NCBI RefSeq assembly: GCF_963853765.1
Contig: NC_088858.1
Span: forward strand, 2,418,001 to 2,482,000
DNA from: Magallana gigas
Lineage: Eukaryota
Reading direction: 5' to 3'
Length of the DNA: 64,000 nt
The translations under genes were made by a program, and so were the position numbers. The notes under the pieces were generated by a model. That model did no database searches. It saw only the letters and a program-made list of their open reading frames with translations, and was not told the origin of the DNA. Positions 1,952-11,200 of the stretch are shown in pieces. Positions within the stretch are counted from its first letter, which is position 1. Each line of letters starts with the position of its first letter.

Positions 1952-4277
1952 CTTAATTAAGTGTTCCTAATATTCATATCATGTTTAAAAGTTTAGATAG
2001 CTGCAGTTTTAGCGTTTCTTTTATTTATTCAAATTCAACATATCTGGAAAAACTGCGACTTTATGAATTGAAATGTTTTAAGTTTTACCGTGACTTTTTA
2101 AATAGATTGATTTTTGTAATTTTTAATAAACATATCTTATCGTTGTTACAAGCATTTTGAATATTTTACACACTAATTTTTATATTTCACAGTGAATTAT
2201 CGCATATGTTTGGGTATTCCCCTCTGACTCTGTGTATTGCAGTTGTTTCCAGCAAAGGTGCTTTTTAAGATCAAAACAGTTATCGCCCCTTTATTACGCC
2301 AGTAGTTTATGATCAATATATTTTTTATATTCATGTTTATCTTTTTAAGTTTTAAATAACGATTCATATACTTATGCACTGTTTGATTTTGTATAAATTG
2401 AATAATTTTATAGATATATTTTAATAACACACAGTACATGTTTGTATTTCGTCGTCCAATATATGCAATTATCATCCATCTATATCCCTGTAACTATTTA
2501 TTGTAAATAAAAGTAGAAAGAGATTACCGAAAATGAGTTAATGACAAAGTCACTGTGTATCTTTAGCGAATGAGTATCAAGTGCTGCTCTATGTATGTAA
2601 TACATAACACACATCTGTCATGCACGTGAAGTACACGTGTAAAATACACGGTACTCGCGTGTAAATAATAAAAAAAAAGGCTTGGTTTCGGGAAGTGTTC
2701 AATTGTTTATATAATCTTGTACATATGTAATTATTAATATTCATTTGTTTTTATTATACATGTTTTATATATCTATTATTATTAATAAATATACTCAAGT
2801 TCCAATACATTTAATACACGTCTATTAGTTCTTATTAGTTTCTGATAAGATCAGTGTCAGACTGTAGATACTCTGACATTTGGTTGTACTGATCCACGGG
2901 AATCAGGGTAATACACACGTATGTCAGTAGGAAAGATGTTTAAGTGTGTGTGTGTGTCTGTGTCTGTGTGTATATATATTGGAAACTGGTAGACGTCACA
3001 GACAAAAATTAAGACTATTGTCAAGCTAAAAGACAAACAACCATGCAGTGAGTGGACCGACTGTAGAAAAGGAAGTTACTGCAGTAACGATACTTGTTAC
3101 AAAACAAGATGAAAAAAATCTTACTCGTTCTTTAAAGTTCTTTTTAGAAAAACATGAACAAAACGCTGACATGTATGTGAAAGTAGGTATGTTAAAGACC
3201 CTAATAACAGCTCATGTTATGTATAACAACATGAAACATACACATCAAATTTCTCTGACGGCGTGAACATGAAACGTGCTATTCCTTCTCACGAAAATTC
3301 GCAGGATTTACTGCCAAGGTAGTTCCTACTTGGACAAAATTTACGAATTTTCTAGAATTGCCTCGTTATTTCAGAGTCTATTTTTTTAATAAATAAAGAG
3401 TGCTGTCTCTTGCAGAGATTTTTCAGACTTCCATATTTTCATGAACCTCGATTTCTGTAATGGCTGTCAAGGGTTGTCTTTCCCGTTACATATTCATCTA
3501 ACCTAGACTGTCTTTCAATGATTACGTTCATGTTTTTATACATGTCTAATTTAGTTTGCATTTCTTTCCTGTATCAAACATTCACCCTCTTTTTGAAGAG
3601 AAGGGATCCCAGTCTATTGGTGAAGTTTGATGAATCTTACATAGACATATAACAAATATTTGATACATTTTTAAATAAAAACATATTTAATAAATAAATG
3701 CAACAATAAGATACATGTACAAAGTGCTTGTGAAAGACTCTATATTGGGATCGAAAGTTCTGTAAAACAGCCGTAATATACATGTGACACAGTACAGGTG
3801 GGTCTTTAGTTTTTTTCATGACAACATACAGATAGTATTACATGTATACTATACTAAGAAAAAACCAATAAATGATTAATAAGTGTCTGAAATAAAAGCA
3901 AGAATATTTATAATTTTGCCTCTAAATTCCTTTAAACAGTAGTCAGGCCAGTAAAAGGTCATAGAAATACACATATAGAAAGCTAGACTTCACTAATTAT
4001 CTACCTGTCACAATGCCCCTTAGACTAGACAAATATATATAATTGGTACCGGTACATATAATTTGGTGTTATAAAAATATATGTCTGACCCCTGAACCCT
4101 CCTAACCGAACATGCAGGTCATTTATCTCTTTCCCCTCCCACTAAATATTAAAAATAAATGTATAAAACATTACATGTATTTCATAAACTAAAATTTAAA
4201 AAAAAAAAGTAAATTAAAAAATTTAATCTCTGGGATTCCCAATACAAGCATAGCATTATGGCTGGAATAGCACAGCA

Positions 4278-7200
4278 TTAGGAATGGTAAACTCGAATGA
4301 CCTCTGTGATGTCCTTTCTACAGATAGGACACCCGTCCCGTCGGTTATGTAACATTTTGGAGCACTCATAGCAGGTGATCATGTGATGACAGGGACACAG
4401 CAGACAGTCTCGCACTCTGTTCATACAGATCCCACACTCTGTGTCGACTGGCGTTGGGTCACGCCGAGACTCCTTCACTGGGGCAGTATTACCCTCGTGG
4501 GACAACACTGGGATCTTCTTCTCAAACATGCAGGGAATTCCGGATGAACTCAGGAGCTGCTCTGCCCTCACTATATACAGGAAACAAGGCAATAAAGAAC
4601 TGATCAAACAGAGGACATCAATAATAGTCAACCATAATAACACAAAGGATGTACACGCATATCAGTATTTATATAAGTGTATGTGTATTGTGTAAATATA
4701 ATAAATTACTAAAAATAAACTAAGAACATGCATATATTTCCCATCAAGGGATACAAAAGCATGAGATATCTGTCCATCTGTCTGTCTGTCCATCCTTCAC
4801 TTACAAGCTTTCCTTTCTTCTCTCTGTTCTTCAGACAAAATCAAAGGATGATTTCCAGATCGAAAAAACAATGTCTTCCCCATCTTTTCTAACATCAAGC
4901 GAACTATAATACACAAACAAACTTGTAATCAGTGATTCAATTTTTGAATACATGTATATTAGATTTTAAACTCCCTACAACACTAAAACTTAACTTTGGC
5001 TCTGCTACTCATCAAAATCAATTTAAACAAATAAGGCTGAATGTGTAAGATAATACATGTACTTAAAATACTAAAGGAAACAAAATATTTCACCAACAAA
5101 AAATTCTTACACCATACCTTATTTTTCAAAGCATATTTTTAAATACCTCGTTGCATTGATTTTTGTGAAGTAAAGCTGGCCGGATTGATTTCAACCTCAG
5201 GAATGTAGTACACTGGATAGAGAAATCTCAGTCCAAGAGATCTCTACAATAAAACAAGTCCAAAAGTGAAACAAAAAGTCATGCTTTTTCTTGAAGACAT
5301 TCCAGGAATGGAAACATAGTTTCCATACCAGTAATTCCAAAATTTTCTGTTTTAATCAAAATTATAAGAAATGAGAAAAGCAGTAAAAGAGTTTGAATTC
5401 TCATGGCTTCTTAAAATGAATTGTTGCCAGACTGTTTTGTAAAATGACGAGAAAGAAAGAATTTTTCCTGAATGGAGGATGTGCTAATCAGAGTCCTCCT
5501 CACCTCCTTGTTCATTACTCCAGCCATGACATCATCAATCTTGAGTCGCAGTGTGCAACTGCCAATCACTGTGTCACCTCGACATAGGTGAGACACTCCT
5601 ACAAGGCCCAGGGTTAATCATCATTAACATAAACTTATCATAAATATACAATCCAAACATTCAAGTACCCTAAGTCAAACTCCCTGTACATAACAAAACG
5701 TAAATAGTATGGTACAAATTCCAACAATTGTTCCTTTAATCATGCACTCTTCTATTAGATTTCGTCACATATAAAGCTGACCTGTTCATCAATCTAGTAA
5801 TAACTAAAAATACTAAAGAACTCTCTGGGATGACAGTCAAAGATTTTTACACAAATCTCCAGTATAGAGAGCAATTAATGCAATTCATAATGGGCCCCAA
5901 ATCAGTGTACAAACATTATCAGCATTGTTGATACTTACTCTCTAAAAGATCTTTCTTGATCTCCATATCCTCCTTCACAGCCTCAAAAATAAAGTCAGCG
6001 TCATTTACAGTTTCTTCCAAACGACTCATGCACATAACCTGGCCCTGCTCAAAATTATAATTTATATATTGTATCATTTCCTGTCATGCAACCAATATTC
6101 TGTAATTCATCTACATGTACTAGACGAAGTGTACTAGTCTTTTGAAAATAAATACTTTTATTAAATTGCATACTGGACTGCATAATACTTTATAAATAGA
6201 AGAAATTGAAACGCTTGTTACAATCTTAATGTATACATGTACAGGTACTGGCCTTTTTTAATTAATTTGCTTCACTCACCACAAAGTTCTTCTGGAAAAG
6301 AAGTCCATCCTCCCTCAGTTGCTTCTTGTCGTCTTCTATAATGTTATATACAGCGTTCAGTGCTGGGATGCTGACGTCCCATATCTTCACTCGATGACCA
6401 TGGTAGGCTAGCTCACCTAGAGGGTTTCAGCATTTGAGAATGAAACTTTATCAATGAAAAATATTGCAGTGTGAGTTTGCAACATAGAACCAGAGAAGTT
6501 TGGGTGATATTAGAGAGGTTAAGCATTTGAACGCGTACGTCTACGGGTACGTGTGGAGCTACAAATATGTTTACACGTACACGTACCAAAATTCGGTGTA
6601 CATTTAATAATCTATACGTGTAAGCAAACGTGTAAAATCATTGGATTTAATATTTTCAACATGTTCAGTTTACTCTCACTGTTTATGAAACTATTCTCTA
6701 AATTTGATGAAACCAAAGCACAGTCGTCCTCAATTTATCGTCTGCTTTAATTAAAATAATGCTTGATAGACACAAAGTCCATATTTTTATCTTTAAATAC
6801 TACAAGTTTTCACCTCCGTGTACTTTTGATTCTACACGTTTTGTACAACTTGTAGATTTACGCAGTATGCAGAAATTATGACGTAATACACATTTAACTA
6901 GGGGATTCCCCTTATTACACTTACTCATACACGTACATGTTCAAATGCTTAACCTCTCTATTGTCTATAGAAATGTATTTTTCAGGGCTTGATAGCCTAG
7001 CAGCAGAGACAAAACATGTTTTTTATGTCTCTGATACTAGCAGTAATTAAGCTGGTGCAACTTTCTCAGGCATCGATCTTGTTCTGGCATTCTATAGTTT
7101 TTACAACACACGTGTGTGTGGTATCATTAAACAAAGAAAAAAGGCTGCCAAGAATCAAATAAAGATGGTTAACATATTGGACCTAGCGTATTGATACCAC

Positions 7201-7516
7201 ATATTGACAAATAATCATATATAGACCTAGTCCGAAATATCTTATATTTTACTGATCTTTTTTAACGATTTTGATAGTTTAGTTGCAAGGGGAGTAAAAT
7301 ATCAAAATCGTTTTAAAAAGCCAGGAAAACGTCAGATATTTTGGACCAATACATCTGCAATAATCATAATGATCCCAGGACGTGCGTTTAGGTTTTGAAT
7401 ACATTTATTGCTTAGTTCGAGGTCAATTCCACAAGCAATATTAAAATAATAAATCCTAATAACATACCTGCTATTTTTGGCCCCAGAATCCCACAACCTA
7501 AGACGGCAATCTTCAT
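4278..7516 (-). CDS. 3-hydroxyacyl-CoA dehydrogenase-like NAD-binding domain fused to a C-terminal C3HC4 RING finger (putative E3 ligase), 291 aa, 7 exons
   Basis: Exons 7516-7468, 6416-6280, 6044-5939, 5598-5504, 5243-5147, 4903-4805, 4570-4278. All introns are GT-AG with consistent phases, total 876 nt. Translation begins MKIAVLGCGILGPKIAGELAYHGHRVKIWD (GxGxxG plus beta2 Asp), contains DADFIFEAVKEDMEIKKDLL and GLRFLYPVYYIPEVEI, and ends CGICMNRVRDCLLCPCHHMITCYECSKMLHNRRDGCPICRKDITEVIRVYHS*. Confidence 0.9.
6512..6959. mobile_element. MITE in intron 1 of the Rossmann-RING gene
   Basis: Perfect 21-bp terminal inverted repeat AGAGAGGTTAAGCATTTGAAC / GTTCAAATGCTTAACCTCTCT. It is flanked on both sides by ATT (a 3-bp target duplication, Harbinger-like; a TA/Tc1 reading is also possible). 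No ORF. Confidence 0.75.
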
Positions 7517-7813
7517 CTTTTTTTCAATCTTTGCTCTACATTTGCAGTTTGTTTACATTGTTATCCACCATCTTGAATTTCACAAGCATTGAAGGGGAGT
7601 GTGCATTATTCGTTGAAGAATATAAATCTTAAAATTAAAATATAAGCACTTTAAATTGTACATTAAAACAAAATGTATATATCAATAAATATAATTTAAA
7701 TTTTAAACAAACTTGATAAAAAACAATATGAATAAAATATTAGAACAGATACTTAAACAAATAATAATTACTCCAGGATGTTTTTAAAGGCCGGCAACTC
7801 TAACTTAAAAATC
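7517..7813. promoter_or_regulatory. Putative bidirectional promoter/5'UTR region between the Rossmann-RING gene and CAMKMT
   Basis: The two start codons point away from each other and are only 297 bp apart. Confidence 0.6.
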
Positions 7814-8194
7814 ATGAATGCATGTGATGTTCGTCCACATAACCAGAATGACAGAAAAACAAAGGCACTCCAGCGATGGAAGATTTTAAAACAGGCACTT
7901 ACAGGTAGCAGTTCCTCAGAAACATGCGCGAGCGATGTATCAGTTCGGCGATTCTCCAGCTTTGGTTTACTGAAAACAGAGAAAATATCCACAACCCCTG
8001 AAGGCAATGTGTGGTTTCGATACACAGCACCTGGAAAACCAGGGTTCTGTATGTCTGTCAGGTAAGAGGGATCTAATAACCACAGCTAAAGTACGTTTAC
8101 TGGTAGGGCCTAATAATTTTTCTGTGATATTTTGTTATTTACTTCTGGAGGAGGTTGGTTGCTCGTTTAAATTGCTCTTTTGGTTACCAATTCT

Positions 8195-8240
<46 letters not shown>

Positions 8241-11200
8241 CACTTATTACTCAATAATAACATTGTTTATGTCTCTGCTCAATACTCTTATTCATAGAAA
8301 CAATTAAGGTATCAGTTTGTCTGTTTTGGAAGCATTTAAAGTTAACTTATTTTTATATGGGAAAAAATTATGACACATTAATTGCTGTGTTAAGTTCTGA
8401 CAGGATTTGTGTGGTTTTTTCCAGACATTTACCTGGAACTATGGATGCCAGCACACTCCTGGGCTTCAACAATACAGGAAATGTTTGTAAGTAAGCATTT
8501 AATCAGCTTCTAAGTTCTTACCCCACACACACCTGTATGCTGCCCTGTCTATGGGATGCATGGTCAAAGTCTCCATGATAAAATTTCACGAGCTTTACAT
8601 TTATACAAAGTATTATTGAGAACAAAGTTTGAAAAAGTACACGCTGATTCGCAGTCAAGTTCAATCAGTTTGCTGATTTATCATTTTTACAACTGTTACG
8701 CCTTGATGGCTTTATTTTAGATTTAAGTAAAACTGTCAAATATTGTAAAGAGTTGTCTTTCCTACTAGAGGAATATTGGTCTATATAATATTAGGCTAAA
8801 AATTAATGTTATGAAGAAGAATTTCATTAGGTCATTTTTCAAAGTTTGATTCATCTGCACATATACGCATGAATTAATACTTGACTTGTCTATAACAAAT
8901 CCATGACAGTGGTAGATAGATTACAGCTATTTTTTCTCCAAAATAAAGTAGAGTTAATGGTCTTTAGGACAAGGTCTTCAACAATAGTGATCCCCACGTC
9001 ACTGTTTCAGTAGATGATGAGGTCCACTGTTGCTGTCACAGTAAGTGTTAAAATCAGTGTCACAGTCACAGTTGGCACTGTCGCTTATTAACTAAGGTCT
9101 TATGTCACTGTTTCAGTAGGCTCATACTGAGAACATGTGTACCTGTATCAGCAGGTGCTTGCTGACTGAGGTCCCATGTCACTGTCTCAGCAGGTGCTTG
9201 CTGACTGAGGTCCCATGTCACTGTCTCAGCAGGTGCTTGCTGACTGAGGTCCCATGTCACTGTCTCAGCAGGTGCTTGCTGAATGAGGTCCCATGTCACT
9301 GTCTCAGCAGTTGCTTGCTGACTGAGGTCCCATGTCACTGTTTCAGCAGGTGCTTGCTGACTGAGGTCCCATGTCACTGTCTCAGCAGGTGTTGACTTAT
9401 AGAGACCCTTTGTTTTTGTTTTTGGTAGATGCCTTACTGAGGTTTATGTCATTATCAGTTGATGCTGACTTTTATGGTTCTATGTCAACGTGTCTCTAAG
9501 TGCTGAGATTCAAAGTCCCCATGTCATTTTTAATTTGGTGATCATTTACTAAGAAAAACCATGTGACATTGTCACTGACAACAGAAGCTGCTTTGCTGAA
9601 CTGACAGGCAATTGGCAAATGAGTGAAACAAACACCAGACTAGATACAACAATCAAATTTGAATCCCACAAAGCTCTAGATCTGTTGTACTTAATACGAA
9701 TACAAGTATCTGTACCAAACATTAAAACATGGTTTGTATTTCTGTACCAAGCTACAGTGAAAGGTCAGTTGAGTAGAGTCCTTAGATTTGACACAACTTT
9801 ATTTACCTGTTACAGGTGTGTGGCCCGCAGAGGAGGTCATGACTAATTACTGCTTCCAGCACTTAGAGAACTTCAGGTAAAATTATGCAGGTAGAGAAGG
9901 TTAATCATATTATTGATCACTATTTTGAATCAATGTGTAAGAAAATAATCTGCTTATTTCTGGTTTTCATAACAGTTTTGGAAAATGAGTCATTCAGGTT
10001 TTATATTATGATTTGTGCTCATTTGTCAACCTTGATGATGCATTTGTATACCTATCTGATGCCAAATCTACTGTACACCAAATCTTTGTTTGTTTTATTG
10101 TTATCAATGGGCTGATTTAAAAAGCAGAGACAATAAATCACAATGCTTTGCATATACAAATGCATTAGGTAAAATATTAAAATTTGACAAACATTAAAGT
10201 TTTATTAAGTAAAAAGAACATGAATATAAAATAACTTAATAAGCAGTTTCTGCACAATTGAAAATAGATATAAAGTTTGAAATTTTAGGATAGAAATCAA
10301 TCTAAGCTATTAATTGAACAATTTAGATTTTAAATGAGATTCTATAAAATCATAATATGCTAACCAATTTAGAAACCATTATTGGGCATAATTTCATCTG
10401 TAAATTGACACTAGAAAATAAAAAAAAAATTCTGATGCAATCTATGTCCCACATGGCTGTACTCTTAATTTTAAAGCTATATTTGATCAATTATGTTTTG
10501 TAGTGACCTTGCGGTGTGTGAGTTGGGCGGAGGAATGACCTGTCTTGCAGGTCTTGCTGTAAGTTTCACATCACAATTTGGCTGTCTATTTTGAAACGTA
10601 TTATTTCAAATGAAAATGTTAAATTGATTTAGTTTTAACAATGAAACAGATTACTTCAGAACCATTTTAACAAGACCTTGGACTTTCAATAGGATGTAAC
10701 GATCTATTTCTTGCGTCAAAACAAGTTAAAATGATGCTAATTTCAAGCGAAATATACACCGATTGTGTAGTCTTTGCTCAAAAGCCAGACCCAGACAAAT
10801 CCTGTTAATTTCAAAGAGACATAACTGAGTGGCCTACAATGAAATAGACAGGCCTACGTCACATTGTCGTTTGACTCACCTACCCAAAGTCCAAGCTCTT
10901 GTTAAAATGGATCTATGTTAAACTATTACATGTATTATAAAAAGAAAAGAATTTTTAGTAATGAAATAACTTTGCAGTTGGCCCTTGAGTCCAAGGCAGC
11001 CCATGTTGTGTTAAGTGATGGGAATGAAGACTCTGTGGAAAGTATGTTAAGATTCCACCATTATATTCTCTCTCTCTCTCTCTCTCTCTTATATGTTTGT
11101 CTCTATGTGTCTCTCTCTCTTCTTTGCTTCAAAACTTACAGATTTATTTTCCATTTTTGATTTTTTTTTAAAGATTTGATATATATATAATTCTGTTTGA

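What the first reader, a model, noticed from the sequence alone, without database searches (positions are those of the whole stretch)
4278..7516. Rossmann (3-hydroxyacyl-CoA dehydrogenase-type NAD-binding) domain fused to a C-terminal RING: candidate metabolite-sensing E3 ubiquitin ligase
Seen: seven clean exons splice into one 291-aa ORF. Residues ~1-178 form a complete 3HCDH_N-like domain (GCGILG, WD at beta2, FEAVKEDMEIKKDL), followed by a charged helix (SEEQREERKALRAEQLL) and a C-x2-C-x11-C-x-H-x3-C-x2-C-x10-C-x2-C RING ending IRVYHS*. Known: HADH/CRYL1/Hbd enzymes have a helical dimerisation domain after the Rossmann domain, not a RING. Terminal C3HC4 RINGs with an aromatic residue in the last few positions (IAP, MDM2, MEX3, Neuralized type) use that tail for dimerisation and E3 activity. 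Inference: the NAD(H)/acyl-CoA-binding fold may have been repurposed as a ligand sensor or substrate receptor that couples redox or fatty-acid state to ubiquitination. I know of no characterised protein with this architecture. The ORF track shows only fragments, so the fusion is invisible without splicing.
Basis: partly seen in the sequence, partly recalled or inferred. Interest (0 to 1): 0.85.

Follow-up and report, generated by a model that had tools for sequence, protein, structure and literature searches.

The report
Dead dehydrogenase fused to RING ligase
This oyster gene is real and expressed, and it encodes an NAD-binding dehydrogenase fold with its catalytic residues replaced, joined to a ubiquitin-ligase RING domain; the same protein occurs from sea anemones to amphioxus, was not found in vertebrates, insects or nematodes, and I found no paper on it.

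Summary
Seven GT-AG exons on the minus strand (7516-4278) splice into a 291-aa ORF. That ORF is 100% identical to RefSeq XP_011428474.3 of Magallana gigas, which is named "3-hydroxybutyryl-CoA dehydrogenase". All six junctions, including the RING junction 4805|4570, are present in a transcript contig, and five also appear as RNA-seq joints.

- **Domains:** Pfam finds 3HCDH_N (7.8e-32) and zf-C3HC4_3 (1.8e-13), but no 3HCDH_C.
- **Distribution:** The gene is single-copy. It belongs to a family of about 290-aa proteins found in cnidarians, spiralians, priapulids, non-insect arthropods, echinoderms, hemichordates and amphioxus. No member was seen in vertebrates, tunicates, insects or nematodes.
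- **Gene structure:** All six introns have the same position and phase in Nematostella and Saccoglossus.
- **Active site:** In 158 sequences the catalytic Ser, His and Asn are replaced by Leu/Met, Arg (157/157) and Leu. The NAD contacts are kept: the Gly loop, D30, E83, E87 and K92.
- **RING:** All eight zinc ligands, the residue at the usual E2-contact position, the Arg after the last zinc ligand, and the aromatic residue in the tail are kept. The closest solved RING is MUL1.

It is most likely a RING E3 ligase in which a dead dehydrogenase domain acts as a nucleotide sensor or substrate receptor. No paper on the family was found. The function is inferred, not shown.

The parts
7468..7620 (-). 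Exon 1. The 5' UTR starts at about 7571-7620; the CDS is 7516-7468 (M1 to the first base of codon 17). It holds the GxGxxG loop (G7, G9, G12) at 7481-7498.
   Evidence: Splice model. Transcript contig L001 starts at 7571. A contig of run X1 reaches 7620.
6280..6416 (-). Exon 2 (residues 17-62). It holds beta2 ending in D30, and the helix-turn-helix that corresponds to the 'clamp-roof' of Hbd enzymes.
   Evidence: Joints 6414>7466 and 6043>6279. Exon length 137 is identical in Nematostella and Saccoglossus.
5939..6044 (-). Exon 3 (residues 63-97). It holds the FEAVKEDMEIKKDL motif with invariant E83 and K92, and E/D at 87 (NAD ribose contacts).
   Evidence: Pfam 3HCDH_N 3.3e-5 on this exon alone. 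Conservation.
5504..5598 (-). Exon 4 (residues 98-129). It holds the former 'NTS' motif, here C112-T113-L114. The catalytic Ser position is Leu.
5147..5243 (-). Exon 5 (residues 130-161). It holds the former catalytic loop R135-F-L-Y-P-V-Y-Y-I-P-E-V-E147 at 5190-5228. The catalytic His position is Arg.
   Evidence: R135 in 157/157 sequences and E147 in 158/158.
4805..4903 (-). Exon 6 (residues 162-194). It holds the last Rossmann strand, the GKTLFFRSG..PLIL motif (L184 sits at the catalytic Asn position) and the start of the charged helix.
4278..4570 (-). Exon 7 (residues 195-291 plus the stop). It holds the end of the helix, a disordered linker with the conserved P215-x-L217-x-H-x-G-N motif (4488-4511), and the C3HC4 RING with its tail, C240-S291 (4281-4436).
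   Evidence: Pfam zf-C3HC4_3 4.1e-14. Junction 4805|4570 in L001. AF2 model. MUL1 alignment.
3699..4277 (-). 3' UTR.
   Evidence: RNA contigs cover 3699-4190 and 3998-4570, and stranded reads are present; depth falls to zero below about 3560.

Best explanation
The locus is a single-copy, expressed gene for a cytosolic RING-type E3 ubiquitin ligase. Its only other folded module is a catalytically dead 3-hydroxyacyl-CoA-dehydrogenase-type Rossmann domain.

Shown here: the seven-exon mRNA; the two domains; the absence of the 3HCDH_C domain; the replacement of catalytic Ser/His/Asn by Leu/Arg/Leu throughout the family; the retention of the residues that contact NAD in real enzymes; a complete RING; and conservation of the protein and its intron positions from Cnidaria to chordates.

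Inferred: the Rossmann module still binds NAD(H) or a related adenine dinucleotide. It uses that binding, together with the invariant former active-site surface (R135, Y141, E145, E147, R176), to select a substrate or to switch the ligase. About 35 disordered residues follow a charged helix, so E2~ubiquitin bound to the RING could reach whatever sits on the Rossmann domain. The aromatic residue three positions from the C-terminus suggests that the RING works as a dimer, as in MDM2 and the IAPs.
For: - Gene model and expression.
- Domains: Pfam 3HCDH_N 7.8e-32 and zf-C3HC4_3 1.8e-13, with no 3HCDH_C hit.
- Fold: the AF2 model has pLDDT 87.8, with a Rossmann domain at 1-180, a helix at 186-203, a disordered stretch at 206-233 and the RING at 238-291. 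Its first 177 residues superpose on NAD-bound Hbd (6aa8, 9fbd) at 1.6 A.
- Not an enzyme orthologue: the best NCBIfam model scores 91 bits against a cut-off of 347 and covers only the N-terminal half of the profile.
- Dead catalytic site in 158 sequences: Ser position is L/M/I; His position is R in 157/157; Asn position is L in 155; the Glu is kept in 158/158. The roles of these residues come from PMC11476959.
- NAD contacts kept: Gly loop, D30 in 150/158, E83 and K92 in 158/158, E/D87 in 158/158. PMC11476959 states that NAD binds the N-domain without significant C-domain contacts.
- RING: eight zinc ligands, R248, L268, P276, R279 and I282 are invariant; I/V at 242; Y/F at 289 in 150/158. It aligns end to end with the MUL1 RING.
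- Age and constraint: 45% identity between coral and oyster, and family members in about ten phyla. Six of six introns share position and phase with Nematostella and Saccoglossus. The gene is single-copy in the genome.
Against: - No biochemical datum exists for any family member, so E3 activity, nucleotide binding and any coupling between them are untested.
- Two residues that hold the nicotinamide side of NAD in Hbd are altered. The S117 equivalent is Leu. The N115 equivalent is Asn in only 91/158 sequences and is Cys in the oyster.
- One lineage of unknown taxon (cluster P0014, 12 members) has lost the Gly-rich loop and eight sequences have Ser at D30, yet these keep R135, E147 and the RING. 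Nucleotide binding may therefore not be essential everywhere.
- The most conserved patch is the former substrate site and hinge rather than the NAD loops. That fits a protein-binding role as well as it fits a sensor role.
Confidence: 0.5

Rival explanations
1. The protein is a RING E3 whose Rossmann domain is a nucleotide-independent protein-binding scaffold. On this reading the fold is kept only as a substrate or partner receptor, and the NAD motifs persist for structural reasons.
For: The strongest conservation lies in the former catalytic loop and hinge (R135-F-L-x-P-V-Y, E145-V-E147, G-K-T-x-F-x-R-S-G, P181, L184), not in the Gly loop. Cluster P0014 lacks GxGxxG but keeps everything else. 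The equivalents of S117 and N115, which contact the nicotinamide ribose in Hbd, are changed.
Against: GxGxxG is kept in nearly all full-length members. The acidic residue at the end of beta2 is kept in 150/158 sequences, and E83/K92 are invariant. This set is specific to dinucleotide binding and has been held for more than 600 My, which is hard to explain by fold stability alone.
Confidence: 0.27
2. The Rossmann domain is still catalytic, with a rebuilt active site (R135, Y141, E145, E147 next to bound NAD). It might act as an oxidoreductase on a new substrate. Alternatively, as in the Deltex RING-DTC ligases, it might use NAD+ or ADP-ribose itself in ubiquitin chemistry.
For: The replacement residues are invariant rather than drifting (R135 157/157, Y141 150/158, E145 155/158, E147 158/158), which is what a functional site looks like. 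A flexible linker would let RING-bound E2~Ub reach the pocket.
Against: All three residues that touch the substrate carbonyl/hydroxyl in the real enzymes are replaced, two of them by aliphatic side chains. The domain that closes the active-site cleft is missing. I found no precedent for catalysis by an isolated 3HCDH_N domain.
Confidence: 0.1
3. The fusion is an annotation or assembly artefact, and the RING exon belongs to another transcript.
For: The RNA-seq joint table did not list the 4570|4805 junction. An intron-retaining form that ends after exon 5 exists (P0241, 163 aa).
Against: Transcript contig L001 carries the junction base for base. Contigs of two oyster species continue exactly 198 nt beyond 4570, which equals exons 6 and 5. 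The same architecture occurs in more than 100 species, with conserved introns.
Confidence: 0.01

Closest known systems
3-hydroxyacyl-CoA dehydrogenase superfamily (HADH, bacterial Hbd, CRYL1/L-gulonate 3-dehydrogenase, FHMPC dehydrogenase 4om8)
   Same: It has a full 3HCDH_N Rossmann domain: Pfam 7.8e-32, and 1.6 A rmsd over 177 residues to NAD-bound Hbd. The GxGxxG loop, the Asp at the end of beta2, the E-A-x-x-E/D-x-x-x-x-K motif and the Glu of the His-Glu pair are kept. The best sequence matches in the PDB are 4om8 (1.4e-15), CRYL1 3f3s and Clostridium Hbd.
   Different: There is no 3HCDH_C dimerisation/CoA-clamp domain. Catalytic Ser, His and Asn are replaced by Leu, Arg and Leu in the whole family. 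It scores far below every NCBIfam enzyme cut-off. It carries a RING instead. The database names (Hbd, L-carnitine dehydrogenase, lambda-crystallin, AIM1-like) are automatic and misleading.
C-terminal zf-C3HC4_3 RING ligases: MUL1 (6k2k), MDM2/MDMX, MEX3C, cIAP1/2, XIAP, MGRN1
   Same: It has the same C-x2-C-x11-C-x-H-x3-C-x2-C-xn-C-x2-C spacing, with the RING at the extreme C-terminus. It has Ile/Val after the first Cys, Pro after the seventh ligand, and Arg directly after the last ligand. The short tail has an aromatic residue three positions from the end, and the MUL1 alignment runs to the last residue, with both proteins ending Y-x-S.
   Different: None of those proteins has a Rossmann domain. 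MUL1 is a two-pass mitochondrial membrane protein, whereas this protein has no predicted membrane segment or targeting peptide in the sequence read here. Dimerisation and activity are untested.
Dehydrogenase-fold NAD(H) sensors such as CtBP1/2
   Same: The working principle is similar: a dehydrogenase-type Rossmann domain whose main job is to read NADH (and acyl-CoA) levels and change a regulatory output (PMC8563733, seen).
   Different: CtBP belongs to the D-2-hydroxyacid dehydrogenase family, keeps its catalytic residues, and regulates transcription or membrane fission rather than ubiquitination. There is no homology beyond the Rossmann fold. This is an analogy, not membership.
Ligand-switched or nucleotide-using RING ligases (RNF146 WWE-RING; Deltex RING-DTC)
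   Same: A RING sits next to a small domain that binds an adenine nucleotide derivative. From my own knowledge of the literature, iso-ADP-ribose activates RNF146, and DTC domains bind NAD+/ADP-ribose.
   Different: The nucleotide-binding folds are unrelated (WWE and DTC versus Rossmann). The comparison is from memory and was not tested here.

Membership tests
3-hydroxyacyl-CoA dehydrogenase enzymes (EC 1.1.1.35/157 type) | N-terminal NAD-binding Rossmann domain (Pfam PF02737) | tested here: met
   7.8e-32 over residues 2-172, covering profile positions 1-173 of 180. Foldseek gives 1.6 A rmsd to 6aa8 and 9fbd.
3-hydroxyacyl-CoA dehydrogenase enzymes (EC 1.1.1.35/157 type) | C-terminal helical domain (PF00725) that dimerises the enzyme and forms the CoA clamp | tested here: not met
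   There is no PF00725 hit in P0187, P0337 or P0043, whereas the bacterial Hbd hits all carry it. After residue 184 the model has one helix, a disordered linker and the RING.
3-hydroxyacyl-CoA dehydrogenase enzymes (EC 1.1.1.35/157 type) | Catalytic Ser, His (paired with Glu) and Asn | tested here: not met
   The equivalents are L114, R135 and L184; only E147 is kept. This holds in 158 family sequences. Residue roles come from PMC11476959.
3-hydroxyacyl-CoA dehydrogenase enzymes (EC 1.1.1.35/157 type) | Score above the curated cut-off of an NCBIfam equivalog model | tested here: not met
   The best score is 91.2 bits against a cut-off of 347, and only the N-terminal half of the profiles is matched.
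RING-type E3 ligases, zf-C3HC4_3 (MUL1/MDM2/IAP-like C-terminal RING) | Eight zinc ligands in C3HC4 order and spacing; Pfam PF13920 above the gathering score | tested here: met
   50.5 bits against a cut-off of 27. C240, C243, C255, H257, C261, C264, C275 and C278 are invariant in 158 sequences.
RING-type E3 ligases, zf-C3HC4_3 (MUL1/MDM2/IAP-like C-terminal RING) | E2-contact hydrophobic residues and an Arg/Lys 'linchpin' after the last zinc ligand | tested here: met
   I/V242, L268, P276 and R279 are invariant or nearly so. Their roles are assigned from general knowledge of RING-E2 complexes, not measured here.
RING-type E3 ligases, zf-C3HC4_3 (MUL1/MDM2/IAP-like C-terminal RING) | C-terminal tail with an aromatic residue near the end | tested here: met
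   Y289 in the oyster; Y or F in 150/158 sequences. The tail aligns with MUL1 ...VIPLYNS and MDMX ...VIKVF.
RING-type E3 ligases, zf-C3HC4_3 (MUL1/MDM2/IAP-like C-terminal RING) | Ubiquitin-ligase activity and RING dimerisation | not testable with these tools
   This needs in-vitro ubiquitination assays and SEC-MALS or a solved structure.
NAD(H)-sensing regulators (CtBP-like, by function only) | Binds NAD(H), and binding changes the output activity | not testable with these tools
   Only the sequence signature of dinucleotide binding could be checked.

The most novel reading that the evidence does not exclude
The family is a nucleotide-directed ligase. The Rossmann pocket holds NAD+/NADH or an ADP-ribose-type ligand next to the invariant R135/Y141/E145/E147 surface, and the tethered RING brings E2~ubiquitin to it. 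Either the NAD+/NADH ratio directly gates ubiquitination, giving a redox-sensing E3. Or the nucleotide itself is a reactant or acceptor, in a Deltex-like ubiquitin-ADP-ribose chemistry built on an unrelated fold. In both cases this would be an ancient metazoan pathway that vertebrates, insects and nematodes lost.
Probability: 0.15. Interest if true: 0.9.

Novelty: new variant of a known kind. Interest (0 to 1): 0.62.

Why it matters
Direct links between metabolic state and the ubiquitin system are few, and most run through adaptors. Here one small protein (291 aa) carries a dinucleotide-binding fold and a ligase domain. It has been held almost unchanged since before cnidarians and bilaterians split.

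No member turned up in vertebrates, insects or nematodes, so it may be absent from the animals in which ubiquitin biology was worked out. That would explain why no one has studied it. Every database name I saw for it is either a generic label ('RING-type domain-containing protein', 'hypothetical protein') or an enzyme name that the sequence contradicts.

The protein is small, soluble-looking and single-copy, and it is present in tractable species (Nematostella, sea urchin, Saccoglossus, amphioxus, oyster). The sensor hypothesis can therefore be tested directly.

At the least, the finding corrects a widespread mis-annotation and defines a new pseudo-enzyme family.

Tried and rejected
- **Homodimer prediction:** Complex prediction on the full-length protein with two copies returned "no answer" (score 0.00; controls not run).
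- **Pfam on single short exons:** only exon 3 and the RING exon gave hits. The other exons are too short, so I used full-length database proteins instead.
- **Literature:** I searched by gene and protein identifiers (LOC105329039, XP_011428474, LOC100892111, CAPTEDRAFT_222534), by "3HCDH_N" plus RING, and by two wider term sets. Nothing on this family came back.
- **Active Hbd/HADH enzyme:** rejected, because the catalytic residues and the C-domain are absent.
- **Gene-model artefact:** rejected.
- **Lineage-specific oyster RING shuffling** (oysters have many IAP-like RINGs): rejected, because the same fusion, with the same introns, is found in Nematostella and Saccoglossus.
- **Neighbouring plus-strand gene:** Pfam and the ESM Atlas gave no identification of its first coding exon.
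- **Sister clade of the Rossmann domain:** PDB scores (4om8 > CRYL1 ~ Hbd > HADH) do not settle it.
Full report
**1. The observation**

On the minus strand, seven exons splice into 876 nt, which is 291 codons plus a stop. The exons are 7516-7468, 6416-6280, 6044-5939, 5598-5504, 5243-5147, 4903-4805 and 4570-4278, each with an AG acceptor and a GT donor.

I laid two presumed RNA contig sets (the runs are not on record as RNA) and two stranded poly-A raw-read runs on 3000-8600. Canonical joints appeared for five introns (4903>5147, 5243>5504, 5597>5938, 6043>6279, 6414>7466), and the read orientation fits a minus-strand mRNA. The joint that matters most, 4570>4805, was not listed, because the tool skipped a simple repeat at 4766-4804 next to it. 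Even so, contigs from two oyster species continue exactly 198 nt beyond 4570, which equals exon 6 plus exon 5.

A 1223-nt transcript contig (L001, from a Logan assembly) settles the point. It maps exon by exon to the window, and its positions 638|639 correspond to window 4805|4570.

The spliced ORF is 100% identical to P0270, which is RefSeq XP_011428474.3, named "3-hydroxybutyryl-CoA dehydrogenase [Magallana gigas]". It differs at one residue (V236A) from the C. angulata entry.

**2. What it is**

- **Domains.** Pfam on the full-length protein gives 3HCDH_N at 7.8e-32 (residues 2-172, profile 1-173 of 180) and zf-C3HC4_3 at 1.8e-13 (residues 237-285). There is no 3HCDH_C hit.
- **Predicted structure.** An AlphaFold2 model built on a 79-sequence family alignment has mean pLDDT 87.8. 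It shows a Rossmann domain at 1-180, a charged helix at 186-203, a disordered stretch at 206-233 and the RING at 238-291.
- **Fold match.** Foldseek superposes the first 177 residues on NAD-bound 3-hydroxybutyryl-CoA dehydrogenases (6aa8, 9fbd) at 1.6 A.
- **Not an enzyme orthologue.** NCBIfam enzyme models match only with their N-terminal halves and far below cut-off; the best is 91 bits against 347.
- **Copy number.** The gene is single-copy. A six-frame search of the whole assembly finds the Rossmann exons only at this locus.

**3. The family**

HMMER and word-index searches, with names from cluster look-ups, show proteins of about 290 aa with the same two domains in many groups:

- Cnidaria: Nematostella, Desmophyllum, Oculina.
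- Spiralia: molluscs, annelids, a brachiopod, nemerteans, the flatworm Macrostomum, rotifers.
- Ecdysozoa: a priapulid; chelicerates (ticks, mites, Limulus, a scorpion, a sea spider); myriapods; a barnacle.
- Deuterostomes: echinoderms, hemichordates, three amphioxus species.

No vertebrate, tunicate, insect or nematode member appeared, even with amphioxus as the query. These searches have limited sensitivity, so the absence is provisional. It agrees with my knowledge that no human, fly or worm protein has this architecture.

The source names are either generic ("RING-type domain-containing protein", "hypothetical protein", "uncharacterized protein") or automatic and mutually inconsistent enzyme names: Hbd-like, L-carnitine dehydrogenase, lambda-crystallin, AIM1-like and FHMPC dehydrogenase-like. 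Coral and oyster proteins are 45% identical over the full length.

I mapped the exons of the Nematostella and Saccoglossus genes. All six oyster introns lie at the same aligned position and phase in both species, and exon lengths 137, 106, 95, 97 and 99 are identical. Both species have a seventh, phase-1 intron just upstream of the RING, which the oyster lacks. The fusion therefore arose once, before the cnidarian-bilaterian split. In those two species the RING sits on its own phase-1 exon, which is probably the ancestral arrangement.

**4. Is the dehydrogenase alive?**

According to a structural study of Hbd (PMC11476959):

- NAD is held by the Gly-rich loop, Asp31, Glu90, Lys95, Asn115 and Ser117.
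- NAD binds the N-domain without significant C-domain contacts.
- Ser117, His136 (paired with Glu148) and Asn186 touch the substrate.
- The C-domain forms the dimer and the CoA clamp.

In alignments with solved enzymes and with bacterial Hbd, and across 158 family sequences, the equivalents are as follows:

| Role in Hbd | Position here | State in the family |
|---|---|---|
| Catalytic Ser | 114 | Leu/Met/Ile |
| Catalytic His | 135 | Arg in 157/157 |
| Catalytic Asn | 184 | Leu in 155 |
| Glu paired with His | 147 | Glu in 158/158 |
| Gly-rich loop | 7-12 | kept in nearly all full-length members |
| Asp31 | 30 | Asp in 150/158 |
| (conserved Glu of the E-A-x-x-E motif) | 83 | invariant Glu |
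| Lys95 | 92 | invariant Lys |
| Glu90 | 87 | always Glu or Asp |
| Asn115 | 112 | Asn in 91/158; Cys in oysters |

The domain therefore cannot carry out the ancestral reaction, but it keeps the signature of adenine-dinucleotide binding.

Acyl-CoA binding in the classical mode is unlikely, because the clamp domain is gone.

The replacement residues do not drift. R135-F-L-x-P-V-Y, E145-V-E147, G-K-T-x-F-x-R-S-G and P181/L184 are the most conserved part of the protein. That points to a new function for the former active-site face.

**5. The RING**

All eight zinc ligands are invariant, as are R248, L268, P276, R279 (directly after the last ligand) and I282. Position 242 is Ile or Val, and position 289 is Tyr or Phe in 150/158 sequences.

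The RING aligns to its very last residue with the MUL1 RING (6k2k, E 6e-8; both end Y-x-S). The next matches are MDM2/MDMX, MEX3C, cIAP1/2 and XIAP. From general knowledge of RING-E2~Ub complexes, these are the positions used for E2 contact, for priming ubiquitin (the "linchpin") and, in dimeric RINGs, for contacting ubiquitin in trans through the tail. This supports an active ligase that may be dimeric, but it is inference. A homodimer prediction gave no verdict.

Between the helix and the RING lies a short conserved motif, P215-x-L217-x-H-x-G-N (P in 149/158 and L in 152/158 sequences). It sits in an otherwise variable, low-confidence linker, and its role is unknown.

**6. Mechanism**

My best reading (confidence about 0.5) is a cytosolic RING E3. 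Its dead dehydrogenase module binds NAD(H) or a related nucleotide and presents the invariant Arg/Tyr/Glu surface, either to choose a substrate or to gate the ligase. The flexible linker would let RING-bound E2~Ub reach that surface.

Rivals:

- **A nucleotide-independent protein-binding scaffold (0.27).** This is favoured by the lineage that lost the Gly loop (P0014) and by the altered contacts on the nicotinamide side of NAD.
- **A rebuilt catalytic site, including Deltex-like chemistry on NAD+/ADP-ribose (0.10).**
- **An artefact (0.01, refuted).**

**7. Comparison and novelty**

The protein works like a C-terminal RING ligase of the MUL1/MDM2/IAP kind, and it meets the sequence criteria for that group. 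It is derived from the 3-hydroxyacyl-CoA dehydrogenase superfamily but is not a functional member, because three defining features were tested and not met.

CtBP is a functional analogy (a dehydrogenase fold used as an NADH/acyl-CoA sensor; PMC8563733), not a relative.

Four literature searches found nothing on this family. I class it as a new variant of a known kind. The sequences are catalogued and the RING ligase mechanism is familiar. The pairing with a pseudo-dehydrogenase, its age, and its apparent absence from the standard model animals appear to be undescribed.

Noticed in passing
window 6506-6965 (intron 1): A MITE-like insertion of about 460 bp with 49-nt terminal inverted repeats (6506-6554 / 6917-6965, 84% complementary). 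One low-depth contig of run X3 joins 6508 to 6961, which is an empty-site allele, so the element is polymorphic. Many reads of the opposite orientation, with loose ends at 6507-6586, suggest copies transcribed elsewhere in the genome.
   Followed up: partly
window 7886-8600, + strand: A divergently transcribed neighbouring gene. It has an exon ending at 8058, a GT..AG intron at 8059-8421, and a next exon from 8422 to about 8488. Its start lies only about 270-300 bp from the 5' end of the Rossmann-RING gene, so the two probably share a bidirectional promoter. Its first coding exon gave no Pfam or ESM Atlas hit.
   Followed up: partly
window 5147-5600; proteins P0241 and P0308: Low-depth contigs run through introns 3 and 4 (5569-5968 and 5216-5533, at about a tenth of the exon depth). 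A 163-aa product (P0241) reads through the exon-5 donor. These are either unspliced pre-mRNA or a minor RING-less isoform. An older UniProt model (K1QCK3, 258 aa) is also shorter.
   Followed up: no
protein P0009 (millipede Chamberlinius hualienensis, 478 aa): This family member carries an extra N-terminal PX (phosphoinositide-binding) domain, Pfam 2.8e-16. It hints at an endosomal or membrane site of action in that lineage, or it may be a merged gene model.
   Followed up: no
cluster P0014 (12 ENA members, taxon unknown): These family members have lost the GxGxxG loop (the N-terminus reads ...ISPLLTVSTDLLTG...). R135, E147, the linker motif and the RING are intact. This is a natural test case against an obligatory role for NAD binding.
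   Followed up: partly
window 4446-4447: A common two-base variant in RNA contigs and reads gives V236A in the disordered linker just before the RING. It is the only difference from the C. angulata RefSeq protein.
   Followed up: partly
L007 5956-6105 and L008 10005-10115: In Nematostella and Saccoglossus the linker that carries the P-x-L-x-H motif is a separate exon flanked by phase-1 introns on both sides, and the RING is the next exon. The oyster has lost the intron between them.
   Followed up: yes
window 4766-4804 and 8187-8248: There are two simple repeats. A GACA/GATG-type run sits directly beside the exon-6 donor, and a (TA)n run lies in the neighbouring gene's intron. The first one hid the RING junction in the read-laying tool.
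   Followed up: no
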